From Kudoa neothunni (taxonomy: Eukaryota; Animalia; Cnidaria), in NCBI GenBank assembly GCA_964304625.1, contig OZ199838.1, forward strand, positions 13,617,002 through 13,681,001: a stretch of 64,000 nucleotides of DNA, read 5' to 3'. The position numbers and the translations under genes were made by a program. Position 1 is the first letter of the stretch, and every line of letters begins with the position of its first letter. The notes under the pieces were generated by a model. That model was given only the letters and a program-made list of their open reading frames with translations. It made no database searches and was not told the DNA's origin. Positions 1,843 through 57,599 of the stretch are shown in pieces.

Positions 1843-4800
1843 TCAACGAAATAGTGGATTTTCCTCCTTGATAAATTATTAAGAAATTGTAAGTGTTAAA
1901 ATACTTACTCCTTGTGTTTTCCGAGCCTCCGTAGATGCTTTAAATTTATTGTACTGTGCCTTATCGTATTGATGTTTGACTACCCAGGCAACTACAATCA
2001 GACCCAGCGAAACGACGATAATAAGGATGGCAATGATAAGTATCCAAATGAGCGGGTTTATTGGAGGTTTGCAATCTTCAAAAGTAACACAAAAATTTTA
2101 CTATGTATGATTTAATTATCATCACCTTGTTGTTTATTCAAACTTTTAATTCTTATAATTTTTGATTTTCCTTCAGCACTTATATGACTATCGTGAGTGA
2201 TTGAAAAATATATGGCGCAATTGTCATAGGTTGTTGCACATTTAAACTTCTCGTCAGTGTCTTCTAGTTCATCAATTTGATAGGTTCCAAGACGGTTACA
2301 CAAATAACACTTTTCATCATTAGTAGATCCATTGCCAAACATGTGACAAATGACGCAATTTTCCAGCTGATTACAAGATTCCTCTTTTGACTTATAGACC
2401 AGTGATATTTAAACATCATCAACTACTCAACTAATCATTACCTCATTCTCACAAAATTCCCCGGAAAATCCAAAGTCACACAAACACTTTCCACAGCTGC
2501 ATTTTCCTCGTCCACTGCAGCTCTATAATTGATTCCATAATGAAAATATTTATTATGGGGTGGGGTTTCATTTACAATATTATTCTTTTTCAATAAACAC
2601 TTTTCATTCCAAAAATCGTGTGCGCAGTTCTTCTGCTCGCAGACAGCCCCTATATATTTGGGAAAACATTCACATTTTCCACAGTTGCATCTTCCACGGG
2701 TGGGTCCACCACAGAACTCGTCCAAACCTGATTGACACCTGGAATTATCACACTCGCAGTGATTCCCAGAAAACAATCCAGATTCAAATTCCTTATATCC
2801 GAACAAAAATATGGAAAAAAACAAGGATAAATTAAATTTACCCCACAAGTACAACGATTGCATTTACATGTTCCGTATCCGCTGCACAACAGACCTTGCC
2901 TATGGCCGGGTGTGTTGCAGTCCTTTGTAGATTCATAGCAATCGCAAAACTCGCCAGAACTGTTGTCAAATAAAATAAGAATATAATGTATTCATAAATC
3001 ACTATGAATCGTAACAGTAACATTTTCCACATATCAAATCTCCATTTTTATTACACGTTTCGCTTTTTATTTCCTAAATAAAATGATAGTAAAGCTTCTA
3101 ATATTGCGTCATTAACCCTTAACGTCTAACCATTGGATTCGCGCGTCCACCTCCCTATTATTTTGTTGTAAAACCTGTTATAATTTGTGTAATTTCGCCA
3201 AACCATTAACTTATTTTATTATGTCGGTCGGTAGATAATGCTTTTTTAAAAATGTAGATGAAATTCTGACGAATATACACAAAATACAACATGCATAATA
3301 ACAAAATTTATAAACAAAATAATATAAAGATGGGCGCATGGAACTGAAGGTTATCCTTTAAGGGCTAACCCTCTAATGGTCCCAAAAACGATGAACGTGT
3401 AATGGACTTTGGAGTAAACTTTACACCACATTTTTTTGAATTATATCATTTTAAAAAATCTATTAATCAATATTATAGAATAATTTTTAATTCCTATGGA
3501 TGAAACACTGGAAAATGCACATTATATTTTGACGTAATCCATGTGATAATCGGCTTCGTTTACGATCCGTCTTATGTCGGCACACATCGAAATTTCATTA
3601 AAAAAAGTGATTGCGTTAATGCGGCGAAATTAAACGTGTTGCGCCAGTCAAAATATTAAAAAAAACATAAGGATTCTTGAAAGTTATGAGAAGTTAAAAA
3701 CAGTTTTTAAATGCGTGAAATGGACAATAAAATTTATAACAATTTTCGCACCATTTAGGAGATTTTTTATCATTTTTTCCTCTCGTTGTTTTCATATTTT
3801 GCTCGCTTTGCGTTAAGAACAGGTTCCAGTTGGGGAGCATAAACAATGATGAAACCTGTTTTTGTTGCTTTGTTTGTGGAATTTGTTGTTAACGATGTTT
3901 TGTATAATTGTTCAACGATTTCTTTACGCAAATCACACATTTTAATTTATTACGAACATAAGATACCAACATATACTTTTCACCGAAAACAAAAATGCTG
4001 ACACAACGGGCTCTATTTGGTGATGATTGGAGGCATGGTAGTATCTCTTTAGTTTTTAACGTAATGTCTCTCTTGTCAATTTTTTTTTCAAACAATTTTT
4101 CAACAAGAAACATCAATAAGAAGACATTTTCGTCAACAACATGATGTTCATTCTCTGATAAACAAAATTCACCAATGAAATCAAGAACCACACATCCTCA
4201 AATAATTTGCGCGTGCGATTTAGTTAATTTATCAAACATTTCATTACTTTCTACAAAAACTACTCATAGGAATTTTATTACATTTATGTTCGAAATTGGT
4301 TAAATTTTTTGGAATATTTTGAATCAAAAATAACATGGGTTAACTTTTACCCCAAAGACCATTACAAGATAAAATAAAAATTAAAACTTATACAATAATT
4401 TTTCGGCAAACATTTTTTCGTCAGCCAAAGACAAAATTTTATTTGAAGAATATCTGAAACCCATTGGGTATTTGTTGACTTTATACAAAGATATACCATC
4501 AATAAAATCGTTTTGGGGTAACGAAAAATATATTCTTCTAATTTTTTAAATTGTTAAAGTTTTTAATTATGAATTTCTTTTAATGGTGTATGATTGAATA
4601 CATGATTAATTATTTATTTTAGTCATGAAAAAATATTTACATAAGATGGATGGTTATGACTTGAGCATTCACATTTGCAGTCTCCGGATAACTCCAATTC
4701 GATTACTCCGTAGTTGATAATTCTCACATTGTATCTAAACTTACACGCATCCAAAGCATAATAATTTCAAAAATACGTCCGTGGGGTACTATCTGGAAAA

Positions 4801-6685
4801 CACAAAGATTGGTTAAGAGTAATTTCAATTTCTATTCTTCCAGTATTGGCGCAATCCAAGGTGCCAGAAATGGACTTTGTGAGGTTCCTTATTGGTCAAA
4901 ACAAAGATGAACGAATTATATATATATATATATTTGAGAAATACTCGCACAACGGTACTATTTGGACTTCTACATAACTATCGTTGTTAGGAGGAATGAT
5001 TTTTATTTGAGATAAAGCTTCCTAATACATATTATTTACGTCAAGAAATCGAATAATACTTCTGCCGCATTAGTTATAGCTTTCACCACATGTTCTGGCT
5101 TTGAATAAAATATCGGTTTAGCACTGATATCTCTTAAATCATTTGCGATATCCTACTCAAATAATTAAACTAAATGATAAGCACGATATATCCACTGCAA
5201 AATATGCAAAAGTGGTAGGTTGAGACGTCATAAAAAGCAGTTGAATATTATTTTTGCTTAGCTCTTTCACTATAACATTATCGTCGGGGTAATCCTAAAA
5301 AAATTCCTACTAAGTTAACAAATTGGCTGATCATTACTCTAAACTGTTGATAGCCTGAGTTTTTATCCAACTGACATCGATTGATGTACCTTCTTAAAAT
5401 GGCCATATTCTAATACATTTTTACTTCATTAAGTAATATTCAAATAATACCCTTCCATCACCAGCCGTTTTGGGGAAAATATTAGTTATAACAAACATTA
5501 CTTTGGTTGATGTTCTGTTGGTAGACCATCCAATCTATTGTTTTTAATTAAATTACAAATAGCTAATATGTACCTCATTTACGCACGTAGCTGCTTGTGC
5601 GATAGCTGTGTATGCTGATTCGGGAAAGTCGAAGCTTGCGAACGTGCTGTATTTAATTTTTAAAAGTTTTAACTTTTCCTAAATAAACAAATGTGACGTG
5701 ATCCACATTGAGTTGGTTAACAAACCAATAAGAAGGTTTGATTTTCAGTGAGTGGAACATAATTGAGGAATTCATATTCAGAACCTCTACGAATAAATCA
5801 ATATCCACTTGTCTGCAAAAGAATAGAATTAGTACGTCCTAACTGGAGAATACTCTTTGTCAAAGAACAATCCTATTCCCACCCGTACACTTGTAGCGCC
5901 AGTTTCAAAAGATTGAGAAACTAATAAAAAATTATAAAAACCAAGCAAAATAAACCCTAATCATAATTTAACTGCGCTTAAATATTATGTCTTTTCTTTT
6001 AACAATAGGAAGTTGGATGATGATTAAATTTATAGTTTTTTCAATTAATACATTCTAATATAACGTATATTTTATCATACTTGTTCCTGAAAGATCTGAA
6101 ATTAGTTTAGATCTGGTGGCTGTAAGTTCAGCTGAGCTATCCATCAGAACGTATATCTCAAGTGGAAGGGATGTAGGGACGGTAATCACTGACTTTATTC
6201 CGCTTATTTTACCTTATATATGTATATATATATATATATATACACTTTTATATTAAATAATTTTCTATTAAACTCTATTAATGACTACCATATCCAGGTC
6301 TTAGATATTTGACCCTGAATTTTTGTGGTTGAATAGTTATCCCATCAAGTTCCAAATGATCGAGAATCTTTTTAAATAATCGCCTTATTGCAACCAATAG
6401 ACTAAAAATACAGTGATTTCTGGTGAACTAAGTTTTGTAACATTATCGCAACGGACACGGCTGGTTTTTAGACATCTATCGCCATTATACACCTATCCTT
6501 GGTCAGAATATGTTTTAGAAATATTGGATGAACTTTATCAGAACACCATCCAAAATTTTCCACCTTTGAACAACACAAGGAGCACTCGTCAACATATTGA
6601 AAGCTGATTTTTAGTAAAACCACTAAAATCGTTTAATTCGGGGGTTTAAAATGGTAGTACCGGAAAAGTATATATAAGCCCACAT
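1843..6685 (-). CDS. Integrin beta subunit, paralog A (multi-exon, divergent beta-I domain)
   Basis: Manual splicing gives MWAYIYFSVVLLKISFQYVDECSLCCSKVENFGWCSDK (signal/PSI), IQPQKFRVKYLRPG, LPLEIYVLMDSSAE, RVGIGLFFDKEYSP, FDFPESAYTAIAQAATC, IGWSTNRTSTKVMFVITNIFPKTAGDG, DYPDDNVIVKELSKNNIQ, four I-EGF repeats (e.g. CECDNSRC...FCGGPTRGRCNCGKCEC), beta-tail, TM LIWILIIAILIIVVSLGLIVVAWVVK and tail ...EENPLFR*. The last exon is uncertain. Confidence 0.93.
3112..4366 (-). mobile_element. Degenerate piggyBac-like transposon relic inside the 1.57-kb intron of integrin paralog A
   Basis: TTAA-CCCTT terminus-like sequence at 3112. Imperfect inverted repeat tgtaatgg(a/t)ctttgg(a/g)gtaaa at about 3398 and 4337-4366. 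ORF 3889-4191 (..SIFVFGEKYMLVSYVRNKLKCVI..) resembles the piggyBac transposase segment F.F....LVSY.PKKNK.V. Boundaries approximate. Confidence 0.6.
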
Positions 6686-7093
6686 TTGTATTTGTACACA
6701 GTTAAACTGTCTAACTAATTAATGTGATGATTTTTGCCTTTTGGGAACATTGTTGTAGACTATCAGTTACAGTGATAAATTTTCTTTGTATATTAATTTT
6801 CATCTAATTATAGGCCATTCACCCTTAGGTTTTATAAGGACTCTTAAAATGTCTAAATTAGGGTTACTCGAATTTAAAATTTATTGAATTGAACAACAAC
6901 CATTAATTCCTGAGTGGTTCTCAACACCCCCAAAGAATTAGAATGATCCTTGTATTTTCTTGTGAGTAACTGGATGGAGAGTACTAAAATGAATCTCAGG
7001 TCATTTGTAAATTTTAACAAATTACATTAAAATTAGGAAAACTTTAATAACTTTTATGGGCTATTTCTAATGGATTCAAAACACAGTCAGTGA

Positions 7094-7950
7094 CCGGTTT
7101 TACGCACTTTTTAAAAAGAAACACAATTTGAATAATCATATGTACAATCTATATATAATGTTTTTTAATGTTGTTTTGGAGAATTTGGATCTAAATAATA
7201 TAATAAGGTTGCGAAATTTCCAGTTTGTTAGTCACGTGGTTGGAGGGTTTTATGCATTTTTCGGAACGTTTTTGAAAAAAACGTAGATGAATTTTGTTTA
7301 ATGTTCGAAAGAATTTAATGAAATGAAAGAAAATCAAATGAAATAGTAAAGCAAGTCCACAATATTTCCTCCAAAACAGCCAAATTTGTTATAAAACACC
7401 AGACATATCCTCTATATCCAACCCCTATGGCATCTTAAAAACATAAATAAAAATTTTTAAATGATTGAGCACAAAACGATTATTGTCTTCATTTGGGAAT
7501 TTATTAAAATGAGTCCAGAAAATTATCCAGGTTTGACAAAAAAGATCGATCGATCATGATCGCAATGGTGAAAGCTATATTTCAAACATTTGGACGAATT
7601 TTTGGTGACCAAAACAACTAATTATTTTATTTCTAAGTGAAAAAAATTATTTGTTTCTTAAATTTATGCAATTCAAATATATTAAACAGCTACGTATATT
7701 ACTATATGCGCGCGTTAATAAATGCGTAAACTGGACGTTACCAATTTCACACACATTTTTCCGCGATCCTGAAGGGATTACTCAAACCCGGTTAACGACT
7801 ATGCTTTCAATTAAAAAAGATTTAACGTTTTCATCAAAATTTACGAATTTTAATTATGTTATTTGATAAATAATTGAATAGTTTTTTGTAATGCGCGCGC
7901 GAAAAAGTGCGTAAAACCGGAAGTGACCAATTTTACACATTTTTCTCGCA
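7094..7950. mobile_element. Non-coding element with inverted and direct subterminal repeats (MITE-like, family unassigned)
   Basis: Perfect 19-bp inverted repeat ccggttttacgcacttttt (7094-7112) / aaaaagtgcgtaaaaccgg (7902-7920), plus a ~60-bp imperfect direct repeat at about 7707-7765 and 7892-7950. No TSD identified. Confidence 0.5.
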
Positions 7951-8458
7951 GTATCGACTCGAAACTCTCGAGGAAATTGCGTAAATCCTCTAACCTACTA
8001 CACAAGTTATATCTACACCATTTTAGTCCTTAAAGATCATTTATGCGGTTCGAAATAGTTATTTATTATTGATTTAATACAGTGAAAAAGATCCCGTACG
8101 TACGTAATCACTTATTTTCCCAAAATAAAATTTTAATTGAAATTTATTAATTAATTAATTAAAATAAAAGGTTATATTCATGCATAAAAATAAAATTAAA
8201 AATTAGGTAGTTATACATGGTATGGAGAGGGTAGAATAAAAAAAAGTTGCATCTCATGCAACGATTCTGCCTAATGAGACATTATTCTTTCTATATATTA
8301 AGTAAAAATTAATTTGCGATGTAATTATATTTTAATCAATTTAAAAAAATAATTCAATTCGAAAAAATAATATCGTTTAGAAGTATTCTTATTCTATTAT
8401 GTTTAATTTTTATTTCAAAGAAAGTCATCCTAAGTTTCACATATACTTTTTATCAGAA

Positions 8459-11400
8459 TCAAGCAAAAATTGATCCAAATACAGGTTCATTCTGAACTTC
8501 GTCTCGGTGTTTCAAAGGAGATGGCTCATTCTAACCAAATAAAAAAATAAATTGTGTTTATTACATCTGGAAAAATACATTTTCATTGGCCGTAAAAACC
8601 GTTCTGTTGTATGAATCCTGATGGTAAGACTTTTCATATTGGTATTTAAAGAAATATGCCATGAAAGTGCCGGCTATTGGCACCACTATGAGAGATATAC
8701 AAATAATTATTGATAACGCGAGTGGACTCAGCACGTATATACAATCTACAAAATATTCTAAAAAAATACAAAATTTTATATTACCTTTATTTCTGTTTGT
8801 CTTCATTATTGAAATGGGAACTTTATCGAATGTTTCGGCTGAAATTTTATTCACAGAAAAATACACCAAGCAACCATCAAAAAACGTCGTGCAGGTGCGA
8901 TTTTTAGGGAATTTCTTAGCGCTTATCACATTAAAAATCGCTTGCATGCTACAGATAGAGCAATTTTGATTGTAGACCACATCCTTATTATAGATCTCGC
9001 AAATAACACAGTTACTATATCTATCACAATCATTAATTGGATGCTAAAATTTTTAGATATTAATTAATACTACCAAAATAAAATCACTTCGTTTTCACAA
9101 TGTTTCCCAGAAAATCCATAGTTACAAAACACAATAACCACACATACACTTCCCTCTTCCTCCACATTCCTATAGTTCATACAGGATTGTAGATGTAATG
9201 GATTAGATAAAGTACTATCGTGCTCCGAGGTTCAATGCATGTTTGTTTCCATAGTTCATGCCCACATCTTCTTCTCTCACATTTTTCTCCCTCATAGTTT
9301 GATTTACACTTACAAACACCACATTCACATTTTCCGTGTAAATTCCCGCCACAAAATTGATTTTCCTCTGTGAGACAATTACTATTATCACAATCGCAAT
9401 ATTTTCCCGCTATCAACCACGATGTTTTATTCTGCGGATAATTTATTCTCAATAATTTGAAATATGAAATTTATAATTACCTTACAAACACACTGATTAC
9501 ATTTGCAATTTCCCTTTCCACCACAGAGCAATCCCTGAGGGTCGCCAACCTTTTTACAGTTGCTGGTTGAATGGGAGCAATCGCAATATTTACCAGAACT
9601 AGTAAATAACAGTGATAAAGAGAAAAAAAGCTTCTGTATTACAAATTTTTGTAACAATAACATTTTCCACAAATAAGATCTCCATTAGAATTGCATGTAA
9701 TACTTGCCACTTCCTAGAATCAGGTTTTATAACAATTCAGTAAGGGATACGCAATAAAGTCAGCAAAATACATATGTAGGGTGACTGGGACTGTCGCAAT
9801 CGCAATAGCAGCCTGTAGCCAATTTGAGATTTATCTTATTTCGGCCCAGTATTAATATCGTGTATCTAACATGAAAAAAATTAGATGCCGCTCTATTTTG
9901 GCACACACTCTAATTGCTTGTCTTCCGGAAAACAGATTTTTGGCTCTATCTCTATCAGCAGGGTAACTGAATCAAGTGAAGATAACGTAAGGTGAGATGT
10001 CGTCTGTTCGACGGCCACATTCCCTCTATTAATATTCCGTTGTAAATGCGTGCAAATAAATGATATCTCAATTTAATATAATTACTCCATATTCAAATGA
10101 TGAAGCTTAAAAATTAAAATAAAGAAATATTTATGGTTTTTTTTCAATTAGATATCACTCAATTTGTTCAATATATATCTAAATACCTTATAGTTACGAA
10201 ACTCAAATAAACTGAGGTTTAATCATTTCAAGAGGATTTTTGTCTAACGTATAAATTTATCATTTTTATGTAAAAATGTAAAATATAACTATATAAATAC
10301 TATAAATAATAATATTGAGATAATAATAAATAGCAAGAAGGAAAATTCTTTTTCTATACAAGTAAAGGTCGTAACGTTACTCATTAAATATTATTTATTC
10401 CATAATTATTTAATGCACATTGAAGAAACGTAATTAATCAATAGTTTATATCTGTGTGTGTGTGTCCTTTATTGGCATAATTGAAGAATTCTACAAAACT
10501 CCACATACAGTAGGTGACTACTCGAGCGCACCACCTGCCATGATTTAATGACTTACACAATACTGTTACTAATTGAAATCAATCACTAATTGAAATCAAT
10601 CGAATAAAAGCATAACAATTACAATAAATTATTAAAACCTTAGTTTTTTTTTAATTCGCTTAAAATAAGAATTAGCTCAAATTTACGACTTTTGAGCACT
10701 AAGTTTAAGGATAAAGTTGCCCAAATGATGGATCGTGGGCACTTGAAGGGAACCAAGCTGTTTCGTTCTTTGAATGATAAAGTGGATATAATGTCATATT
10801 ATCAAAGTATATCGAATGGTGAAAACAGAAAAACTAAAATTCTCTTTTATTTTAACTTAGAATCTCTATCCTCTTTAAATTAGATTTTGGGTAATAGAGA
10901 ATCCATAATGAAGTCTCATAATGGAGTGAAAATTACAAATAACCACCAAACGTTTAAAAAATTTACTATTTCTTTAAATGATTCTCTTATTTATTTGAGC
11001 AAAATGTACAATTTTTGCAGAAAACGGAATTGTCGAATGCTATCTTACGGTCATAGATCTAGAAACAACGATTTACGACTAAAGAAAGTCAGAGATTTAC
11101 CAGTAAAATATTAATAACTTTTTCAAAGCGAAATCAAACTAATAAGTATGATAAAAACTTTTAGTTATATTTTATTGAGTATATTATTTAATTTTTATTG
11201 GTACTAACTCTTATATCGTCTTCTCTTGAGTACAGATAATTTATTTGTTATGCAACACTCTCTTAAGATATAGTAATTCATTAAAAAAGTTCTATGCATG
11301 TTTTTATTTAAAATCGTCAAAACCTTATGATTGAGATAAAAAATAATTTTGATTGTAATAAATTGGATGTGTGAATTGCATTTATTTTTTTTAGTTCTTG

Positions 11401-13416
11401 TTGACAGAAATCGTTAGTATTATCATCATGTTGTCTAAATGGTTTGTTTTCTACAAATTTAAGTCAAGGATCGCCTAGATTAGCCGCATATAACCTTTAT
11501 ATCATTGTTATAGAAAAATTAGTTTTATATTAAAAACCCAAATTTATCTTCACGTTTTTAACCAATTTCCATATTTTTCGGTTATTTTAATTACTTAAAA
11601 ATAACAATAACCTTTTAATAATTTTATAAAATTTAAAAACCTAATAACAATATTTAGATGTGGTGAATTTAATATTTAGAGTGATGAATATAGATATGTA
11701 AATAGCTGACGTTTATATTTGGAATAAAGAATATTTTTCAACAAATATAACTGAATAAACCTCTCAATTAAGTTAATTATACTAAATATTACTTTTAAAT
11801 TTATAATTGTAAAATTGTATTTATTATTAAATTAAAATCTTTACTTCGTGCTTTTTATATTTATTTCCGTATATTCATCCTCCTCAGGTGCGATAAACTC
11901 CATATTATTTATAAATTTCTATATTCATAGATAATAAAACACCATTTTGACTACCAAAGTTTAACCTTTGTTTCCTCCTTCACCACCGTTATTATGTTTT
12001 TAATATCATTCACATATAGCGATTTTATACCTATATATGCGAGGTCTTGACTAATTTGCTAAAGAAGAATAATTAAATATTGTTTTGACTGAAATATATT
12101 CGTTGAGTACATTGTAAAAATGGTATGTTTCATTGATAGTGGATATGAACAATAGATTCATATTTTTTTCATGCAGCACGTTAAATACGTCGTAATCACC
12201 AGCATAATCCTTATCAGAAAATAGATACCAAATATCAAGTTGATATGCTAACTCTAAATTGATTTGTGTATTCCCCTAAATCGTCAAGGTCGCACTTGTT
12301 CCGAAACTTTTTTACAATGCCCATACTCTAAAATACATAAAATCAAATAATTTCTTTAATTTACCTGAGCAACTAAATGAAATTACCAACGCATCACCGG
12401 CAGTTTTGGAGGTTTGTGAGGTAATGACAAACATCACTTTTAGTACATTCGTATGGTTGCTCCACCCTACCTGTAAATAAATTATATTGTGCCATTATTT
12501 CATCATAGTTCTACTTTTGATTCGCATAAAGTAGCTTGTACGATCGCATTATAGATTGAGTGGGGTGAACTGTCCTTACCTACATCAAAAACTAAATTTT
12601 TCAAGCTTTTCAAGCTTTTCTAAAATATACTACATTAAATATGCCAGCTTTGTTAGTTACTTTTAGGATGTGGGCATCTCGCGTTAAATTAATAAAATTC
12701 TTGAACTCTCCAATATGTTCACTAAATATTAAGTTTATAAATCCTCATTATTAGAACCTTACATTACCTTCGCACGGGAGCATATTCCTTATCAGACACA
12801 ATTCCAACTCCCACCCCAACTGATGATACATTTAATTCAGTCGTTTCTACTACAATCTCATTAATAAATTAGTCTACTCACTTGATTTACAAATGGTGTA
12901 GAATTTCATAAAATATAGCTCAATAAAACGTCGTAAGCTCGTTGAATGATCAACAATAATGTATATTTCTAAGTGTGGTGGTTTTGCAAGATAGATATTA
13001 GTCTTGACTGAAGTCCTTATACCTATTTTACGTCAAAACATCAAAAAAACTACAACATACCTGGCTTTAAATATTTCAGCTCAACATATTGTGGATTAAT
13101 GTCTAGTGAATGGTTGGTAATACGATTTAAAATCTAAAATCTAAATTTTACCGTAATATAGTCAATATCAAAATACCTTTTCCTCATGGTCTTTGAAAGT
13201 TACAATTTTACTACATAAACTGTTGCCATTTGATAGACAACGGTCAAACAAAAAATTCTAATAAAATATATTTCTTAACAACTTTTGAAGACTTACTTTA
13301 TCAGCACACCAGCCCACATTGTTTCCATTGATGCATCCGGAGCATTTGTCGTGTTGTCTTGCTAATGATAATATACTCGATAGTAACACCAAGTAAATAA
13401 TGAATTGTTTTATCAT
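8459..13416 (-). CDS. Integrin beta subunit, paralog B (multi-exon, divergent beta-I domain)
   Basis: MIKQFIIYLVLLSSILSLA signal, DKCSGCINGNNVGWCADK..DRC (PSI), INPQYVELKYLKPG, HLEIYIIVDHSTSLRR, VGVGIVSDKEYAP, FKNFINLT, KDSSPHSIYNAIVQATLC, VGWSNHTNVLKVMFVITSQTSKTAGD, GCYCDC, four I-EGF repeats, TM ALSIIICISLIVVPIAGTFMAYFFK and tail ending NEPVFGSIFA*. Contains a ~1.8-kb intron (about 10027-11845). Confidence 0.93.
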
Positions 13417-15053
13417 CACAATCAATATTATATTGTTTGTAACAACTGTTTTCAGAAAAAATAATCTTTATATGGGATCGGTATGGGATTTAAATAAACC
13501 AAAGCTAAAGCAACCAACGTGAAATTAGGCATATTGCATGGACTTAAATACAGAAGGTTAATTCACTGTCAATATTTATATTTAGTTGATTTATTTGGTG
13601 AAAAAAAATAAAGGAGTCTGAATGGATCTCTCTTTGAAAATCTCTGGTGAATTCACCTCTCGCCCTATTTAGTCTAATACTAAACACAAATCCCATCCTA
13701 AAAGGGTTCCTTATTAAATAATAATAATCTCTCTGCTTTAAATCATCTTATAATCAATCATGTTTATTGATAAATTTTTATTTCAGTTTAAATAGCATAT
13801 GCCAGTGTGTCCTAAACTTTTTTCTCTCATGCCTCCCTCTTTCTTTATAAAAAGTCCAGTGCACACCTTTTTTTAAAAATATTGTTTTTTTAATTTAAAC
13901 TGCTTGTAATTTTTATTCAATGTTCAAGTCTCCTTAAAATTTAAAATTGATTAATATATACTTTATTTCTCATCAAAATAAAAATGTTTTCGGTCAGATC
14001 TAATTTAATTTATCTATGGACCTTAAAAATTAGCATCTTTAGTTCCTCACTCCCCCAAAAACAGCGTTCCGTGAAACTCATGATAATCCAACTCACATTG
14101 GGAAAGACTCGATGTATACAGGGTTTATAAATCGAAAATAAATAATCTAGACATAAAATTAATCAATGTTATATTAGGTTAAATCAAAAAAAAGAAAAGT
14201 CGATGATTATATATTAGACAAGATTGGGATTAAAATCATTTCGATTCTATTTGGATAAAGACCATGTTAAATGTTATTATTTATTTGGTATACAATTAGT
14301 CATTGTTTCTGGTATTGTGTTTTGATATTCATAGTCGTTTAAAAGTCAACGAGATCAAAAATTGATTTGTTGATTGTTGATGTAATAGTGACCTATATTC
14401 CTTAATAATCTCACCGTTAACCATGCAACATGAATGTTCAGGATGTTCCGCGTCCCACCAGAGGAGTTCGTTAAAGTTCCAAAAGTTTCCTTGATCCACC
14501 CTAACTTTTTCGCACTCCACTACTAATGGGAAACACTTGTTTAGGCCTTTAACAATGCTTCCAACTAGGATTTATTGCAATTAACACTTTGCAAATACTG
14601 ATAAAGTTCATATCCCTCAAATACTCCGACATTCCATTCATATAACACTCTAAAAATTAACACACGATAAGATTTTTATTTTAATTATTGCCAGAAATAA
14701 ATAGCGTAAAAACCAGTGATTTGGCGATTAAACCATATAAAGTTTATTGCGCGATCCAAAAAACTAAAAATCAAACTATTTAAGCCATAAAATTTCACTG
14801 TTATTTCACGAATCAAAAATAAATGATGTTTGAACTTTAATGTGCAATTTAAATTAAATTTATAAAAAAATATTCCGACATTTATTTTAAAATATCAAAA
14901 TTCAAAAAACATAGTTAACGCCTGCAACAAAACATTGAAAAATTTTATTGATGAATAATGTAATCCAAGAATGATGAGAAAAATGTTATTTGTAATATAA
15001 TATAATATGCTCGAATAGCTGAAAGTTTTCCATCATAGTAATTGGTCAGTCGT

Positions 15054-18000
15054 CTATTCGGGAACAACACCCTGACTTAGACGATAGAGGGGATTTTCAT
15101 GCTAAATTGAAATCATTGCAACACATTCGATTCGATTCAAATATTAATATTTTAAAAAATATATATTAAATCTATTTAAATTATTAATTATTATTATTAT
15201 TACATATTTAGTATCGCTAAATATCTTTATAACTGGCATATCAACGGGATGAATATTTGGGGTTTAATAAACAAAGAAACAGTTTAAAAAATTTGAATGG
15301 TTCTCATTAGGTATATATTACGAATAGTATTTTAAGACAGTAACTAACTAATACCATATGTTTTCGTGATTCTTTTTCGCTTCTCATAAGCTTTAGATAC
15401 TGGTTTTTATCGTAGGTGTATTTGGCAAACATCGCAATGCAAGCTATTATTGTGATCAGGAAAAACACACCTACGAATGTCGCCACTAAAATAGCTTTAA
15501 CGTTGACTTTTTTCTCACAGTCGTCTTTAACCAATGGTTTTATGTTTACAATTACACTAGAAGGATCATTTTCATCAACTGTGTAAAAATAAACACATTT
15601 TTCTTGGTATGACTGACACGTGTGATCAGTATTTTCTATATTATTCTTATCAAAAATATATGCCGCCAAACTGTCGCATGCACCACAATTTTTATTCTCT
15701 TTTGATGGAAACAATTTACACGCGACGCAATCCGTATGTTTGGCACATGGATCGTTAAGGTCCTACATATGAATATTGGTTTTACCTATCACATGTTTCT
15801 ACGAATATTACGAAGAGCTCACAATTTTCACCAATAAATCTATAATCACAAGCACAATCTCCGCACGAGCATTTTCCATGACCACTGCAAACCTACAATA
15901 TCAAACGCATAATAATCTCAACTGGGAACCAAGCTAGAAAATTACTTTATTGTATTTATTGACAGGGCATTTGCCTTCCCAAAAGGAACATTCTTTCTCC
16001 TCACATCTTTCACCGGTGTAACCCTCGTTACATATGCACTCTCCACAAGCAGGGGTGCCTCGTTCGGGACCTCCACACAGTTCTTCAGAGCCCGTGAGAA
16101 GATGGCGGTTATCACATTCGCAGTACGTCCCACTGATCAAATCAACAGAAACCTTCAAATATTTTAAATTATAGCCATTTAGATTAGATGAAAATGCTTA
16201 CATTATCCGGCAAGCATTTACATGCATTGCACTCACACGTACCGACCCCATTACAAGTACGGCCTTCTTCATCATCTATAGAAATACAACTCGCAGTGGA
16301 AATTGTATTAAAACACCTTTGTTCACCACTATCATGGATATGAAATTATTTTTACATGATACAATCAATTTTTGTATTTAAACAATATTTTTTATTAATA
16401 CTTAAGGTAATATAACACATATCACGATAAATTACAAAAAATGCCACTTCCTATCATTAAAAAGGGTAACTACCTAGTTTGAGGCAAACATTGATCTTTT
16501 TGGAGAACTTTACCATGGAATATACATTTCTCAGCTGCCTATATAATAAAATAGAAGCCTGAAGACGTTTTCTTCAAAAAATATCGAGTTCAACAACAAC
16601 CAACTTACTTGTTGTGTATTTTGTATTGGGGCTATACATTTATTGTCACACAGTGTTGATAGATCTAATTCTACTGTACCATAGTTGACAATTTTAATGG
16701 AGTATCTAAAAATATGGGATATATAAATTTAAAGGTCTGTTAACAGAACCTTCTAATTAATTTTTCCGGAAAACATTTTTTTGGTGTTATTTCAACATTC
16801 CATTCGAACAGAGACTCAGAATTTACACATGTGTAATGATTGTTTATAGGACCTTGATTTTTACTATACATTGCGGAGTCCGTATGAAATGGATTCAATC
16901 TAACTTACGTGCAACCGTCAGATTTTAGGTCTATCTTGAAAAAGTCATCTTCAAGTGGAATTTTCAAATTTATTTTCGATTTCACATCCTATGATCATGA
17001 TAACGATCACTAATCATTTTTACGTTACCACTGTAATGGTGTCTCTCAACCATGCAGCTATACCTAAGGATGTATCATATGGTTTGTTAAAAGCATCAAG
17101 GTAGTTGGTTAAATCATCTAGCTAAAGAAAAGGAGAATGGTTTCCAACATTAAAACTATATACGTATAGATTGGTCTCAGAAGAGTCTTTCGAGGTAGTC
17201 ATAAGTGTGACATTTCTATCCAACAAGATTCTACGTAAGCTGTAATTGTCGATGTAGTCCTAGGAGTGTAAATGTATATTTAGATATTATAGGTGATTAT
17301 TTATTTTTTTCGCGTAAACAAACATTATCTATACATAGAACGATTGAACAGTTTGCCCACCGTCCATTTGGCATTGCTCTTTGAATTTTCTTACTACTCC
17401 CATTCTCTATTTAGTCTGATTGTAACTGGTGAAAGGGAATTGGTTCATACCCATCCTTCTCCTGCAGTTATAGGTTTATGCGTAAGATACACCAATACAA
17501 ATTTAGAGGCATCAGGTTTCCAGCCAATCTATAATAGAAACGATCAGAAAAATTACTCTTCAGGGATAATATTTCTGCTTAAATAATTAGTAATTGTTAT
17601 AAAATATGTATAACATGCGTGTGATCAATTACTTTTTTAATTTTAGACTATATGATACAACTTTAGTAATAATAAGATTTTAAAAAATCCCAAAATTTTA
17701 TGTGGTTTAAGAGGTTTTGTAAGTTGTTGAAAGCAAACCTCCATTTGAGTTAGAATTTAATCTGAAGACAGCGATTGGCTTCACATAGTAAAAATAGATT
17801 ATTTATACATATTTAATATTAAATTATATTGTTTATATTTAAACAGTAGCACTACGCCTTTCTTAGGTTTATTAATTTGAACAAAATATATAGGCATATA
17901 AATTTGGATTTTTTTAATTCTATCAAGATAAAATAATAGAATACCTCCTTGTCACATAAAACAGCATGAGCGACTGAATCTAATGCGGAACCTTGATCAA

Positions 18001-18917
18001 TGACATCTTCAGTGATATGGGCATTTAAATTGTTTAGTGTATCCTAATGCATAATAGAAAATTTTGAAGGTTAATGTAAACCACCCGTAAGTTGTCCAAA
18101 ACATTGGTGAGACTGATTATATTTTTGAATTCGTAGTCACGGTTTCTAAATGTAGTCTGAATTCGCATTAAATGTATAAGTTAGTTACAAATCTCTATTT
18201 GGCGTAGTCATGGAACGATAGATTTTGTCGTAATAGAATCCGAGTCCAAAAGCATAAGATCCTTCAAATGGTGCAAAATACTCAACTAAAAGATTTTCTT
18301 AAGTTTATAGAATAAATTTTTAATAATTTACTAAAAGGCTTTAATTCTTCTTTCATATTTTCTACTTCGTTAGAATTTACACCAGGAAATAACAAATAAA
18401 TTTGATGAAAGGTAGGTTTCTTTGCTTGGACTGCAAGGTTAAATGAGTAGAGATTGTCTGAAAATTAAACTGGTTCGTATATCACATTTTTGGCACAAGT
18501 TAAAGCTATACTTTCTTGTAAGTTTTTGATTGATACATGTTGAGGGTTTATTACTAGATTTTCTTCGTTGATAGCTTTTACAACCTAAAATATCATATTA
18601 AAACATAAGACATCCTTCATAATAATAAATACGGTATAATTTATATTTAAAATCCCCGTATAACATTCATAGTCATCTTGCATTTTATAGTTTCTGACCA
18701 ATAAACCTTTATAGACAGATAATCATCAGTAGGGGAATAAAAAATTAATATACTAAATAATAACAAAATCAGGGGACGCTTCGCCATCGTTTTTACGAGA
18801 ATACCAGCCAAAATCCTCGTAACTGATAAGGATAAGAATTTTTTGATAGGATAATAAAGACCAATTTTATCTTGATTACAAATATAATATGAAATTATTT
18901 TTAAAAATTGGATTCAT
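15054..18917 (-). CDS. Integrin beta subunit, paralog C (most divergent; MIDAS absent, PSI and I-EGF1 reduced)
   Basis: INPQHVSIKNLQE, TFHQIYLLFPGVNSNE, AFGLGFYYDKIY, YEFKNIISLTN, SALDSVAHAVLC, IGWKPDASKFVLVYLTHKPITAGEG, DYIDNYSL, I-EGF repeats, beta-tail and TM (ORF 15307-15714), last exon HENPLYRLSQGVVPE*. The start codon and first exons are uncertain. Confidence 0.9.
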
Positions 18918-36660: not shown

Positions 36661-37842
36661 TAGTGTTTCAAGTTCAAGATGCATTTACGTCCAATCATGA
36701 AACAAATATTATAGATTCAGCTGATATAATAATTAATTAAACCGTGAAAAAAAGAAAATATAACAAAACAAATATGACTTCACGAGATTTAATTTTAAAT
36801 TTATCAGAAGTTCGTTATTTTTAATTAATTAGCTATATAACTTTAAGGAATAAGTCCCAACTAAACAAATTGCCAAGTATGTTGGAATTCATCCAACAAC
36901 TGCCACAAGAATTCTTAAATTGAAGGATTCTATGGGAAATGTGGAAAAGAAAAAAATGGGAGGCAACCGACGTCAATTATTATACGACGAACATCAACAA
37001 TTCCTAAAACAACTTGTTGACGACGATCGCACTATAACATTAAAATCTTTAAGGGAAATACTAAATTCACAATATAACTAACATTAGTGTGTCCAGGCAA
37101 ACGATTGCTAATGTTCTTGAAGGATTTCACTATTCATTACAAAAAATTTCCATAGTTCCTGTTGGCAGAAATCTACCCGAGAATATAGAGAAAAGAAAAA
37201 AGTAAATTATATATAACAAATTAAAATGAAATTTAAATTAGTTATGTAATAAATTATCTTCAACAAAAGCCAAATTATTCCCTTGTTTTTTATATTGACG
37301 AAGCAGGATTCACTTTATCAATGAGACGCTTTTTTTGAAGGTCCCCTATTGGATCTAGAGCAAATTTAATCATGAGGACCGTCCGCTCCAAAAATATTAC
37401 ATTGATAGCCGCAATGAGCGCCCAGAAAGTATGGTCAACCAAAGTACACGAGGGCTCAGTAAATGAAAATATATTTTCTGAATATTTCATCCAACTTTTT
37501 ATGGAGTTACAATTGAACGGTGTATCAAATGCATTGCTCATAATGGACAATGTAAGGTTCCACAAAACTGACTACATCATGGATCTCGTGATAGAAACAA
37601 ATCACTCGATTCCGTTTCTACCGCCATATTCCCCGTTCCTTAACTTGATCGAGGAACTTTTCAACCAACTAAAAGTAATAATGAGACACAAGAACCAAAC
37701 AACCAAAACTGAACTCATAGAGGCGATAAAATCTAGTCCAAATGATGCTCAAACAACGAAGTTATTGAAAATCGATTTATTGTTTTGATATTTAATAATT
37801 ACCTATTTTTTTCAAATAATGCGTCTTGAACTTGAAACACTG
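36661..37842 (+). mobile_element. Tc1/IS630-like DD34E transposon with defective, intron-containing transposase
   Basis: TA TSDs at 36659-60 and 37843-44. ~24-bp TIR (c/t)agtgtttcaagttcaaga(t/c)gcatt. HTH region, YIDEAGF, IMDNVRFH..LPPYSPFLNLIE (34-residue spacing). In-frame stops and a frameshift. Confidence 0.92.
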
Positions 37843-39789
37843 TATATATACATATAGAGTTTAAAATCGATAAAACACTATTGTCAATTACGACAATGAC
37901 TGATTTAATAATAAATTCATGGACAAATACAAATGTTAATCTTTTAGTCTTTATAAAAATTAAAAACTAATTTATTGATAACTGGTTCATTATGCGGCAT
38001 TAAAATTAACGAAAAAAAGTTAATAAGGTTAAATATATTAAAAATTGCCCAGATTCCAATGTTTCTCGAACATTGAGTATACCCGATTACTCATTATCCG
38101 AAATAGAATCTTTACAGTCTCCATTTAAACACTTTAAAAGACTAATACGTTTTCGTACAAACCAACACACACCTCACACAGCCATTTGCAAACGCTCAAA
38201 TTCTCACGTTGGTTTATGCGAAAACACATTAGTCGTTTGTTGTCGCTAAACACCAGAACAAACTATTAATCACGACATTAAAGTTTTGCAAGGAAGGAAT
38301 AGCATACTCAACATGAGACCAATGAATTGGTAGTCGTACAAAAAGTAAATCCAAATATCTTCCAGGGTATTTTCTAAATAAAACCATGATTATTTCAGTA
38401 TAGAATAGCCATTAATTTCTTACAAGCATGAATCATTAATACATGAATTGATTCGAATATAACGGAAAAAGGACAAAATTGAACTAATCCAGCTTTGGTT
38501 TTGTTATCAAGTCTAAAATAATATTAAAGGTTTTTTCATAGAAATATCAATAATCATACCATTCGACGTAAACAACAAAGTTGATTTGTTGTATTCAGTA
38601 GGTATCTTCCAAAATATGTAAGTGTTATTCATCCATAATAGAGGAATTGGCGAAAGTAAAAAACCAGAAAAAGCTAATCTAAAAAATGAAATAGATACGG
38701 ATATTTCTAAAATAAAATCATTTAATACGAATAACAACCTTGATTTGTTGTAGCGAAAACATATCTTCCAAAATCATATTCAGTCTTCTAGTTTTATGGA
38801 ATTTTGCCAAAGCATAAAATTCATTGAATATTTAGCTACACAGGGAGATTAATAAAACAAAGAATTTCAATAAATCATACTATTGGCAGATAAAACAAAA
38901 AAATTAGGTTTTTGAACGAAGATTACATAGACAACTATCATTCGATTATCGTTGAATTGACACTATATTTAATGTAAGAATATTAAATGTTGCATGTATA
39001 TTTATACCATGACATTGATAATTTTGTTATCTTAACGCTTCCGAATAGACTATGTTCTTTGATTTTCCATCGGGTGCCAATACGTAAAGGTTTCGTTTTG
39101 AACCAACGCGAGGCACGGCAACATATAACTGACCGTGTGAAAGATAGGGTTCTTGAAGGTGCATGTTGTGGGAAGAAAACAACAAATAAAGTGTTTGTTA
39201 TAATCCCTTATTAAATATAGCGGCGCCCAAATGTGAACGTGTGACCTCATTAGTGGTTAGTATCGTTTGTTGGTTTGGATACGTGTCCTTTCTCTAATAC
39301 ATAACAGTGCAGACCAGCTATTTTAAATGTTTGTCCTGGGGATTTATTAGTGGACATTGCAAAAGAAACTTTAATTGGAAACTGTAATCTTCTGACGGTA
39401 AATGGTACGTCTGATGGAACAATGGGTATTCTTGGGATATGTACATTTTCGCTCGTTGCACTGCCCGTCATGAATGTTTTCTCAATCAGATGAGCCACCA
39501 GATGTTTAACTATCAATCGAGTTCCTTTGCATAGACGTGGTACGTCCTGATTCCTCAATAACATAATGGGAGCACCAATTTTAAGAACTAATCTGTGTGA
39601 GGGTACACCAGGCAATTCTAAGCAATTTAAAAACTCAGTAGGATAGTTGACACATTCGGTTGGGTCAACATTAGTGTCGATAGGTCTATAAGTCATTTCT
39701 TCTCCAGGCAACAGTTGAATCATCTCGTTGTTTATGGTGTTCACCACTTGATTGGTAGGGGCAAGAATTGCCCTTTTATATAACTGTTG

Positions 39790-40105
39790 TATCCTCGAGT
39801 GCACGGGGCAGAAAGAAACAAATGAAAAAAACTCGAAAAAAGAGAATGCTAATTTTAGTAAAAAGTAACGTTATATGTGGTGAGGCGGACCCTACATCCG
39901 ATTGCCGAACATGTGAACATTCACCTCTGGGTATTCCTGTGTGAATTTTACCCATTTTTTAGTTTTACCGTTTTTTAGTTAACCGCATTACTCACTTATT
40001 GGCAATCGGAGTAGGCCCGCCTGATAATTCTGGTTCCTTTAAATTGTTTATGGTTTTTTGACGGATATCGTACGGTTGGTCACGATACCCAAACATAACC
40101 AAGAT
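39790..40105. mobile_element. ~310-bp insertion in the Helitron helicase containing an inverted repeat
   Basis: Helicase homology breaks between ..EKVF and RAILAP. The insert holds aggcggacctacatccgattgcc (about 39882) and its near reverse complement ggcaatcggagtaggcccgcct (about 40001-40022). Boundaries approximate. Confidence 0.55.
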
Positions 40106-57087: not shown

Positions 57088-57599
57088 CAATTATCTCATA
57101 TTCTCTTTCTAAGTATAAGTTTAAGTTTTTATACGAGTGATATTCGTTTTCTGTGTCATTCTTTATTTCAAAAAGCTGTTCTAACAAAAATCGTCGATAT
57201 TTTCGAAAGTAAATTCCATCGCGCTATAAACTCCGATTGATGCCGATGAACGACGTTGAATTCCACTGAACTGTAAATTAGTCGCAAGTACAATAGAACA
57301 TGTATCTTGACCTATAATAACATGCATTTTGATGCAGGTGTTTATAACATTTGATCGATGGATGGATTGCATTTTTTACAATTTTATTCTCTCTAGAGCA
57401 AACTTTTAAACAGCTAATATAGCTGCCTTATGAATAACTATTATAGGGACAATTTTTTGGGTCAATTGCGCAATAAAATAAGAAAATAATTTTGGGGTCA
57501 AAAATAACCGCGTGGGCACATACTGAATTTTTCGACGATTAAATCCTAATAACGATGACTACGGCAGGCTTGCTTAACTATCGAGCCTGAATACCACCA

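What the first reader, a model, noticed from the sequence alone, without database searches (positions are those of the whole stretch)
1843..18917. Tandem array of three integrin beta genes, each with a dismantled metal-ion ligand-binding site
Seen: three same-strand genes with largely shared exon boundaries and full integrin-beta architecture but very divergent sequences. Known: ligand binding needs the beta-I MIDAS (DxSxS, the Glu of D.PE, the Asp of [ST]D; beta3 D119/S121/S123, E220, D251) plus the ADMIDAS DD. Here A has DSSAE (6127-6141), keeps PE, changes TD to TN (5481-5483) and has no DD. B keeps DHSTS (12937-12951) but has PE to PH (12560-12562), TD to TS and DD to RR. C replaces the motif with FPGVNS (18372-18389), has no PE, and has TD to TH (17478-17480). 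The exons I translated stay in frame. Inference: an expanded family of cation-independent 'pseudo-integrin' surface proteins, possibly decoys, alpha-independent adhesins or host-interaction proteins in a parasite.
Basis: partly seen in the sequence, partly recalled or inferred. Interest (0 to 1): 0.85.

Follow-up and report, generated by a model that had tools for sequence, protein, structure and literature searches.

The report
Integrin-beta paralogs with degraded metal sites
Three neighbouring genes of the fish-muscle parasite Kudoa neothunni are real integrin beta paralogs whose ligand-binding metal site is altered (A) or largely lost (B, C); they belong to a parasite-specific expansion that also holds copies with an intact site.

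Summary
Spliced models give three minus-strand integrin beta genes: A (22 exons, 736 aa, intact), B (20 exons, one frame break in I-EGF4) and C (19 exons, 699 aa, intact, no PSI domain).

Against canonical integrins:
- A changes 2 of 5 MIDAS residues (S123E, D251N).
- B changes 2 (E220H, D251S) plus two SyMBS residues.
- C keeps only S123 and D158.

Three corrections:
- The array has five genes. The two just before the window keep the full MIDAS and SyMBS, and a canonical beta lies on contig 3.
- The ADMIDAS Asp pair and the specificity loop are missing from the whole Kudoa-specific clade, including the copies with an intact MIDAS.
- A is modified rather than dismantled, and B may be decaying (frame break, no NPxY).

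A and C look functional. Their reading frames are open, all introns are GT-AG, the cysteine framework is retained, pN is well below a saturated pS, and the tails carry NPLF and NPLY. C has two paralogs that share its derived traits.

Other first-stage notes flag similar arrays elsewhere in this genome. The cation-independent receptor reading is an inference.

The parts
1843..6685 (-). Gene A coding region: 22 exons, 736 aa, intact. It has a signal peptide, PSI, hybrid and beta-I domains, four I-EGF repeats, a beta-tail, a transmembrane segment and a short cytoplasmic tail.
   Evidence: Spliced model with all introns GT-AG and no stop. A local profile built from 64 canonical integrin betas scores it 401 bits over positions 30-766 of 782. 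Pfam Integrin_B_tail scores 35.2 bits on 2115-2408.
6127..6141 (-). A: DSSAE in place of the DxSxS motif (S123 becomes Glu)
5619..5636 (-). A: SFDFPE. The SyMBS/MIDAS loop is kept (D217, P219, E220); N215 becomes Ser.
5481..5483 (-). A: Asn at the D251 position
1849..1860 (-). A: NPLF motif in the cytoplasmic tail, the last exon
8561..13416 (-). Gene B coding region: 20 exons, about 740 aa. It is open except for one frame break in exon 18. The tail has no NPxY (it reads NENVFF).
   Evidence: The local profile scores 272.5 bits before the break and 36.2 bits after it. Pfam Integrin_B_tail scores 26.1 bits, below the curated cut-off.
12937..12951 (-). B: DHSTS (DxSxS kept), followed by L-R-R-F where canonical betas have M-K-D-D
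12560..12577 (-). B: KDSSPH in place of NxDxPE (N215K, D217S, E220H)
12417..12419 (-). B: Ser at the D251 position
9126..9129 (-). B: T-run holding a one-base frame break inside exon 18 (I-EGF4), with a stop two codons later in the ancestral frame. An AG acceptor 10 nt further in (exon start 9159) would keep a 739-aa open frame, but I-EGF4 would then keep only 3 of its 6 cysteines.
15054..18787 (-). Gene C coding region: 19 exons, 699 aa, intact. It has a new signal peptide and no PSI domain, then beta-I/hybrid, I-EGF repeats with cysteine losses, a beta-tail, a transmembrane segment and a tail.
   Evidence: The local profile scores 281 bits over positions 94-767 of 782. Pfam Integrin_B_tail scores 28.7 bits, below the cut-off.
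18372..18389 (-). C: FPGVNS in place of (M)DxSxS (D119P, S121V, S123 kept)
17990..18007 (-). C: DVIDQG in place of NxDxPE (no Asp217, no Pro-Glu)
17478..17480 (-). C: His (within LTH) where canonical betas have the Asp of [ST]D. Depending on the alignment, D251 falls on this His or on the Thr before it.
18792..18821 (-). C: out-of-frame remnant of the ancestral PSI exon (reads YEDFGWYSRK, compare ..NFGWCSDK in A), directly upstream of the present ATG at 18787
   Evidence: read directly from the sequence
15946..16152 (-). C: I-EGF3 exon with a paired loss of two cysteines. The two C-type paralogs at C1:14.53-14.54 Mb share this loss.
15084..15095 (-). C: NPLY motif in the cytoplasmic tail, the last exon

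Best explanation
Shown. A, B and C are tandem paralogs of the integrin beta chain in Kudoa neothunni. They are the last three genes of a five-gene, same-strand array. The two genes just before the window keep the full MIDAS and SyMBS. All five belong to a Kudoa-specific clade of beta-derived genes that had already lost the ADMIDAS Asp pair and the specificity-determining loop. Within that clade the remaining metal ligands were then replaced to different degrees. A has S123E, D251N and N215S. B has E220H, D251S, N215K and D217S. C keeps only S123 and D158, and has also lost the PSI domain and one I-EGF3 disulfide. A and C are intact genes under long-term constraint.

Inferred. A and C, and the C-type paralogs, are made as type I membrane glycoproteins. 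They keep the integrin scaffold: hybrid domain, cysteine-rich stalk, beta-tail, transmembrane helix, the membrane-proximal YDK..Y..F motif and a talin-type NPxY/F. C and B cannot clasp a ligand carboxylate through a MIDAS Mg2+. They therefore work either as metal-independent recognition or adhesion subunits, or as non-ligating partners that occupy alpha subunits and talin. A may still hold a metal in a changed coordination shell. B also lacks NPxY and carries a frame break, so it is the likeliest to be decaying. Tandem duplication with fast divergence of the ligand face fits a surface-receptor family that is diversifying in a parasite.
For: Organism. G000 has 40,260,978 b and GC about 30%. Its fourth contig is 18,219 b by subtraction, exactly the mitochondrial contig length reported for K. 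neothunni. Assembly span 40.2 Mb, N50 12.0 Mb, intron median 49 and exon/intron GC of 36.8/26.0% also match (PMC12239612; my exon/intron GC is 0.36-0.38/0.25-0.27 with median intron 44-49).

Gene models. All introns are GT-AG. A and C have 0 stops in frame against 40-73 in the other two frames.

Family membership. A local profile built from 64 canonical integrin betas aligns end to end: A 401 bits, C 281 bits, B 272+36 bits, shuffled controls at most -2.5. Integrin_B_tail Pfam hits occur in all three.

Metal-site table.

Neighbours and other copies. Gene 0 matches PF00362 at 98.8-99.5 bits and has DSSAS, NIDFPE and ATD. Gene -1 has DSTLS, NNDDPE and ATD. The C1:9.67 Mb gene has DSSQS, NNDEPE and ATD. 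The C3:7.23 Mb gene is canonical, including SDE at ADMIDAS and a DRNEYRKF..NPLY tail.

Tree. The Kudoa clade has 100/100 support, as does the C-type subclade (C with the genes at C1:14.53 and 14.54 Mb).

Constraint. pS is saturated (0.70-0.92) while pN is 0.30-0.37 for A, 0.44-0.45 for B and 0.49-0.51 for C. A keeps 50 of 58 canonical cysteine columns, the same as its MIDAS-intact paralogs; B keeps 48 and C 39.

Tails. NPLF in A and NPLY in C.

Literature. MIDAS and SyMBS are essential for ligand binding while ADMIDAS is not strictly needed (10.1101/2020.04.29.069435). Free-living cnidarian betas keep DxSxS (PMC2397394). D119 and D217 mutations are used to abolish RGD binding (PMC12852126).
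Against: No orthologs of A, B or C were found in another species (one search was blank, and only gene 0 has an ortholog, P0001), so constraint on each lineage alone is not measured. Pairwise pN/pS averages over two lineages, and dS is saturated. In C's beta-I domain pN/pS is 0.74-0.78, which is weak constraint. B has a frame break. Alpha subunits could not be confirmed with Pfam models, so heterodimer formation is unsupported here. Glu at 123 in A and His at 220 in B can themselves bind metals, so 'cation-independent' is not demonstrated. No structure prediction was possible for the joined models.
Confidence: 0.6

Rival explanations
1. Decaying duplicates. The copies with changed MIDAS are pseudogenes, or are on the way to becoming so, and the residue losses simply reflect relaxed selection after tandem duplication.
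For: B has a one-base frame break with a stop two codons later, no NPxY and the longest Kudoa-clade branch, 1.82. Gene 0 next door also shows two frame breaks relative to its ortholog. C's beta-I domain has pN/pS of 0.74-0.78.
Against: A and C have fully open frames of 736 and 699 codons, where the other two frames hold 40-73 stops. All 21 and 18 of their introns keep GT-AG. Synonymous sites are saturated, so a dead copy of this age would be riddled with stops. Cysteine frameworks are retained and cysteines are lost in pairs. The C-type lineage duplicated after its losses. B is otherwise open across 20 exons, so a break there must be recent or an assembly error. An acceptor 10 nt further in keeps B's frame open.
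Confidence: 0.2
2. Still metal-dependent. The sites have been rebuilt rather than lost. A (Glu at 123, Asn at 251, SyMBS nearly whole) and perhaps B (DxSxS kept, His at 220) still bind a cation and ligate in an integrin-like way.
For: A keeps D119, S121, E220, D158, D217 and P219. B keeps D119, S121, S123, D158 and P219. Glu and His side chains are common metal ligands (general coordination chemistry, my own knowledge). Constraint on A equals that on its MIDAS-intact paralogs.
Against: The equivalent single substitutions at MIDAS positions abolish ligand binding in studied integrins (also my own knowledge of beta3 D119, S121 and S123 mutants). C has no plausible ligand set left: D119P, S121V, E220G and no Asp at 251.
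Confidence: 0.25
3. Modelling artefact. Wrong exon choice hides alternative or mutually exclusive exons that carry the canonical residues.
For: There is no RNA evidence. Several alternative GT/AG combinations keep the frame open in C (3024 chains). C has a 416-nt intron next to the exon that carries the D251 position.
Against: Spliced alignment with templates that carry the canonical residues (P0001 and amphioxus beta1 P0004) picked the same motif exons and found no better-scoring alternative. Exon lengths and phases match those of the MIDAS-intact paralogs exon for exon. A Kudoa-clade profile finds no further exons in 19000-64000.
Confidence: 0.03

Closest known systems
Canonical metazoan integrin beta subunits (for example vertebrate beta1/beta3 and cnidarian betas such as Acropora AmItgbeta2)
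   Same: The whole-length architecture and order of domains match, as do the cysteine-rich stalk, beta-tail, single transmembrane segment, membrane-proximal acidic residue and NPxY/F (A and C). A profile of 64 canonical betas aligns end to end.
   Different: The MIDAS is incomplete in A, B and C. The ADMIDAS Asp pair and the disulfide-bonded specificity loop are absent. C has no PSI domain. The tails are short, with one NPxY/F or none (B). Free-living cnidarian betas keep DxSxS completely (PMC2397394).
MIDAS-intact Kudoa paralogs of the same clade (genes -1 and 0 just before the window; the gene at C1:9.67 Mb)
   Same: Same 22-exon structure as A for gene -1 and the C1:9.67 Mb gene. Same loss of ADMIDAS and the specificity loop. 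44-48% identity to A. Same tail type.
   Different: They keep D119, S/T121, S123, N215, D217, E220 and D251. Gene 0 has lost about half of its introns and shows two frame breaks.
Type II integrin beta homologs of Amoebozoa
   Same: They are integrin beta homologs in which the MIDAS and ADMIDAS motifs are reported as hypervariable (10.1101/2020.04.29.069435).
   Different: They are non-metazoan, have a different architecture (extra or replaced N-terminal domains), and their SyMBS is reported as well conserved. Here the SyMBS is lost in B and C.
Dictyostelium Sib proteins (my own knowledge; also named)
   Same: They are type I adhesion proteins with a VWA-type domain, a cysteine-rich repeat region, a transmembrane segment and a talin-binding NPxY tail that act without a classical alpha/beta integrin pair. 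This is a possible functional analogue.
   Different: They are not integrin beta orthologs. No relationship was tested here.
VWA domains that bind ligands without a metal (von Willebrand factor A1 and A3; my own knowledge)
   Same: They set a precedent that the VWA/beta-I fold can bind partners after losing a working MIDAS.
   Different: They are different proteins in different contexts. This is an analogy only and was not tested.

Membership tests
Integrin beta chain (homology and architecture) | Beta-I (VWA-type) domain inserted in a hybrid domain | tested here: met
   Spliced alignments to P0001 and P0004 and a local profile of 64 canonical betas. Pfam PF00362 itself hits only gene 0's large exon. 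The A, B and C exons are too short to score exon by exon. The joined proteins were not sent to Pfam.
Integrin beta chain (homology and architecture) | N-terminal signal peptide and PSI domain | tested here: inconclusive
   A and B have a hydrophobic start and PSI cysteine pattern. C has a signal-like start but no PSI; the profile match begins at position 94. No signal-peptide predictor was available.
Integrin beta chain (homology and architecture) | Four I-EGF repeats and a beta-tail domain | tested here: met
   EGF_2 and teneurin-EGF Pfam hits, and Integrin_B_tail hits of 35.2 bits for A (over the cut-off) and 26.1 for B and 28.7 for C (under it). Alignment A1. Canonical cysteine columns kept: A 50, B 48, C 39 of 58.
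Integrin beta chain (homology and architecture) | Single transmembrane helix and cytoplasmic NPxY/F | tested here: inconclusive
   A hydrophobic stretch before the tail is present in all three. A has NPLF and C has NPLY. B has NENVFF and no NPxY.
Ligand-competent integrin beta (metal-ion sites) | MIDAS: D119, S121, S123, E220, D251 | tested here: not met
   A is D,S,E,E,N. B is D,S,S,H,S. C is P,V,S,G,T/H.
Ligand-competent integrin beta (metal-ion sites) | SyMBS: D158, N215, D217, P219, E220 | tested here: not met
   A is D,S,D,P,E (4 of 5). B is D,K,S,P,H (2 of 5). C is D,D,I,Q,G (1 of 5).
Ligand-competent integrin beta (metal-ion sites) | ADMIDAS Asp pair (D126, D127) | tested here: not met
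   A is A,T. B is R,F. C is N,E, across an alignment gap. The pair is also absent in the MIDAS-intact genes -1, 0 and the C1:9.67 Mb gene. The canonical C3:7.23 Mb gene has D,E.
Ligand-competent integrin beta (metal-ion sites) | Non-covalent heterodimer with an integrin alpha subunit | not testable with these tools
   Pfam alpha-subunit models PF08441 and PF01839 find nothing in the genome. Alpha arrays are claimed only in unverified first-stage notes.

The most novel reading that the evidence does not exclude
The Kudoa-specific clade is a working, diversifying receptor system. MIDAS-less beta chains (C-type, B-type) pair with the parasite's own expanded alpha chains, or act alone. They bind host or parasite partners without the Mg2+-carboxylate clasp while still coupling to talin and actin. 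This would be a metal-independent integrin within Metazoa, retained and duplicated in a genome that has otherwise lost most of its genes.
Probability: 0.25. Interest if true: 0.7.

Novelty: new variant of a known kind. Interest (0 to 1): 0.5.

Why it matters
The MIDAS is treated as a universal feature of metazoan integrin beta chains. An animal lineage that keeps and duplicates beta chains without it would show that the integrin scaffold can be reused for another binding mode or for regulation. In a myxozoan, integrin beta expression has been linked to adhesion and virulence in Ceratonova shasta (PMC6843538), and integrins have been proposed there as drug targets. Knowing that most Kudoa copies lack the canonical site therefore bears on which copies matter and on whether RGD or cation-directed inhibitors could work. 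It also gives a natural series within one array, from intact to modified to lost, for studying how the site degrades. No paper in the held library describes this.

Tried and rejected
I stopped there, so there is no RNA or read evidence, and read laying was not used.
- Pfam on open frames and on in-frame exons cannot see the beta-I domain of A, B or C because the exons are 25-46 aa.
- The search for homologous proteins with C's largest exon found nothing. The other two searches were not spent, because exon-sized queries cannot reach full-length relatives.
- The one search of protein representatives went to gene 0's 257-aa exon. It returned one close relative (P0001, 68% identity, Logan SRR33529766) and otherwise canonical integrins at 36% identity or less.
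- Pfam models for alpha subunits and Talin_middle found nothing in the genome. I_LWEQ hits at C1:6.20 Mb and C2:5.15 Mb are compatible with talin or a HIP1-type protein and are not diagnostic.
- Exhaustive GT/AG chaining for C gave 3024 open chains, so I chose exons by homology, exon length and phase.
- Stretches fetched near other first-stage notes (C1:10.544-10.569 Mb; most of C1:2.925-2.935 and 2.512-2.540 Mb) gave no profile hits or only EGF-type hits. The family count of at least 12-13 loci is therefore a lower bound.
- dS is saturated, so no usable omega could be estimated.

Full report
**Source.** The window is G000:C1:13,617,002-13,681,001 of a 40,260,978-base assembly in four contigs. 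Contigs 1-3 are 17,154,348, 12,040,071 and 11,048,340 b, which leaves 18,219 b for the fourth. That is exactly the length of the mitochondrial contig reported for Kudoa neothunni assembled out of yellowfin tuna data. The reported span (40.2 Mb), N50 (12.0 Mb), GC (30.4%), median intron (49 bp) and exon/intron GC (36.8/26.0%) also fit (PMC12239612; my values are). An earlier follow-up note of this scan (s1-698978) named the same species. The paper does not mention integrins, and it says that very few RNA reads mapped to the parasite.

**Method and limits.** Exons here are 25-250 bases and introns about 44 bases. I therefore wrote a spliced protein-to-DNA aligner and curated the junctions by reading the three frames. 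The joined (spliced) proteins exist only in local scripts and were built from coordinates. They were used for MAFFT, a local HMM, Nei-Gojobori counts and a tree. They were not sent to Pfam, the homology searches, the atlas or structure prediction, and that joined step is left out. Those tools saw the models only exon by exon, by reference. A 200-base withheld stretch just before the window (L001:8794-8993, read as N) was left as it is. It probably covers 5' exons of gene 0.

**Gene A.** The coding region runs from 6685 to 1843, with 22 exons and 736 aa. All 21 introns are GT-AG and there is no stop.

**Gene B.** The coding region runs from 13416 to 8561, with 20 exons. All introns are GT-AG and the frame is open except in exon 18 (9088-9169, I-EGF4). 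That exon is one base out of register with A's 81-base exon at the T-run 9126-9129, and a stop follows two codons later. The 14 codons before the break and everything after it still read as conserved integrin sequence in their respective frames. An AG acceptor 10 nt further in (exon start 9159) would give an uninterrupted 739-codon frame, but I-EGF4 would then have only 3 of its 6 cysteines. Without reads I cannot tell an assembly or haplotype error from a recent break.

**Gene C.** The coding region runs from 18787 to 15054, with 19 exons and 699 aa. All 18 introns are GT-AG and there is no stop. C starts with a good signal-like peptide and goes straight into the hybrid domain. A recognisable remnant of the PSI exon lies out of frame at 18792-18821, just upstream of the ATG.

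**Family membership.** Pfam finds Integrin_B_tail and EGF domains on single exons of all three genes. The short beta-I exons do not score. A profile built locally from 64 full-length canonical integrin betas aligns end to end. A scores 401 bits over positions 30-766 of 782, C scores 281 bits over 94-767, and B scores 272.5 plus 36.2 bits. Forty shuffled controls score at most -2.5.

**Metal sites.** The table uses beta3 numbering and comes from the alignment with six canonical betas (consistent).

| Gene | MIDAS D119/S121/S123/E220/D251 | SyMBS D158/N215/D217/P219/E220 | ADMIDAS D126/D127 |
|---|---|---|---|
| A | D S E E N | D S D P E | A T |
| B | D S S H S | D K S P H | R F |
| C | P V S G T-or-H | D D I Q G | N E (across a gap) |

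The only slip is 'DD to RR' in B, which is R-F.

- A six-frame Pfam scan of the genome puts the strongest PF00362 match (98.8 bits) 0.7-1.2 kb before the window start, on the same strand. This 'gene 0' has DSSAS, NIDFPE and ATD, a full MIDAS and SyMBS.
- A further gene ('-1', C1:13,607,377-13,612,592) has DSTLS, NNDDPE and ATD, and the same 22-exon layout as A. The array is therefore -1, 0, A, B, C.
- A gene at C1:9.67 Mb is also MIDAS-intact.
- A gene at C3:7.23 Mb is canonical throughout: DLSQS, then SDE at ADMIDAS, NVDHPE, ITD, and a DRNEYRKF...NPLY tail.
- Two genes at C1:14.53 and 14.54 Mb resemble C. They share its non-Asp at position 251 and the paired loss of two I-EGF3 cysteines.
- Profile searches find at least 11 loci by the I-EGF3 exon, plus weaker EGF-only hits at C1:2.52 and 2.93 Mb. 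This is a lower bound.

**Relationships.** In a maximum-likelihood tree the C3 gene groups with the canonical outgroups. A, B, gene 0, gene -1, the C1:9.67 Mb gene and the C-type trio form a Kudoa clade with 100/100 support. The C-type trio is itself supported at 100/100, and the rest of the clade is unresolved. Branches are long and the tool warned of possible long-branch effects. Because the outgroups and several members of the clade keep the MIDAS, the intact state is ancestral. The different replacement residues in A, B and C suggest separate degradations, but the unresolved topology does not prove that. The ADMIDAS Asp pair and the disulfide-bonded specificity loop are missing in every member of the clade, including the MIDAS-intact ones. 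Those two losses came first.

**Constraint.** Synonymous differences are saturated in every pair (pS 0.70-0.92). Nonsynonymous differences against the MIDAS-intact paralogs are 0.30-0.37 for A, 0.44-0.45 for B and 0.49-0.51 for C. The EGF stalk is the best conserved part, and C's beta-I domain the least (pN/pS 0.74-0.78). Amino-acid identity to the MIDAS-intact paralogs is 44-48% for A, 35% for B and about 28-31% for C. The coding frames of A and C have no stop, while their other two frames hold 40-73. At this divergence a dead gene would not stay open and keep all its splice sites. A keeps 50 of 58 canonical cysteine columns, the same number as gene -1 and the C1:9.67 Mb gene. B keeps 48. C keeps 39, and its losses fall in the PSI domain and as pairs. 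Gene 0 against its ortholog P0001 from another sample shows pN 0.22 and pS 0.79. These are pairwise averages. No ortholog of A, B or C was available.

**Cytoplasmic side.** A ends ...YDKAQYNKF...NPLFR, and C carries NPLY. Both keep the membrane-proximal acidic residue. B has Glu there and NENVFF instead of NPxY. The genome has I/LWEQ-domain loci, which fits talin but does not prove it. Alpha subunits could not be confirmed with Pfam models. Only unverified first-stage notes claim alpha arrays.

**Interpretation.** The literature held here states that MIDAS and SyMBS are essential for ligand binding whereas ADMIDAS is not strictly required. Free-living cnidarian betas keep DxSxS, and D119/D217 mutations are used to kill RGD binding. 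On that basis C and B cannot use the canonical clasp. A is a borderline case, with a Glu at the Ser123 position and an Asn at 251. The most likely reading is that A, C and the C-type paralogs are expressed membrane proteins that keep the integrin scaffold and talin link but bind differently or not at all, while B is decaying. This functional part is inference, and I put it at about 0.45. The structural facts I put at about 0.95. The nearest precedent found is the 'hypervariable' MIDAS of type II amoebozoan integrin beta homologs. I found no report for Myxozoa or other animals.

**Verdict.** This is a new variant of a known kind, of moderate interest, and it needs expression data and orthologs. 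Other first-stage notes of this scan describe similar MIDAS-poor beta arrays elsewhere in the same genome.

Noticed in passing
L001:6362-8750 (C1:13,614,367-13,616,750, just before the window; minus strand): Gene 0 is the MIDAS-intact neighbour. It has lost about half of the family's introns (11 aligned blocks against 22 exons). It also shows two frame breaks about 95 nt apart (near L001:7565 and 7475) relative to its ortholog P0001, which reads straight through. This could be a pseudogene, a haplotype variant or an assembly error.
   Followed up: partly
L001:8794-8993 (window -208 to -9): A 200-base stretch reads N (withheld). It probably covers 5' exons of gene 0. I left it alone.
   Followed up: no
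L007 (C1:14,527,000-14,536,999) and L008 (C1:14,537,000-14,546,999), plus strand: Two C-type integrin-beta-like genes lie 0.9 Mb from the array. They share C's paired I-EGF3 cysteine loss. In L007 the N-terminal half of the beta-I domain aligns very poorly.
   Followed up: partly
window 3074-4640 and 10026-11844: A and B each have one intron of 1.6-1.8 kb, at different positions, in genes whose median intron is 44 bases. The longest open frame inside (3892-4197, 102 aa) has no Pfam match. Insertions are suspected but not identified.
   Followed up: partly
window 39253-42191 (minus strand): A run of open frames with PIF1-like helicase and Pif1 2B domains (108.8 and 56.9 bits), interrupted by stops. 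It is probably the remnant of a Helitron-type element.
   Followed up: partly
window 37339-37785 (+), 45332-45856 (+), 57559-58224 (+): Transposase fragments: two DDE_3 (Tc1/mariner-type, 81.7 and 76.8 bits) and one DDE_Tnp_1_7 (piggyBac-type, 44.7 bits).
   Followed up: partly
window 49025-51459 (+): A gene with DEAD_2 (173.9 bits) and Helicase_C_2 (140.5 bits) domains in two unusually long open frames of 526 and 280 aa. This is an XPD/RTEL1/FANCJ-family helicase.
   Followed up: partly
G000 contig 4: By subtraction its length is 18,219 b, identical to the mitochondrial contig reported for K. neothunni. This fixes the identity of the assembly.
   Followed up: yes
L013:1810-2444 (C1:2,523,809-2,524,443, +) and L010:5647-5724 (C1:2,930,646-2,930,723, +): Only hybrid-end and EGF-type exons of further, much more divergent integrin-beta-derived genes are detectable by profile. 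Their beta-I exons, if present, are beyond recognition exon by exon.
   Followed up: partly
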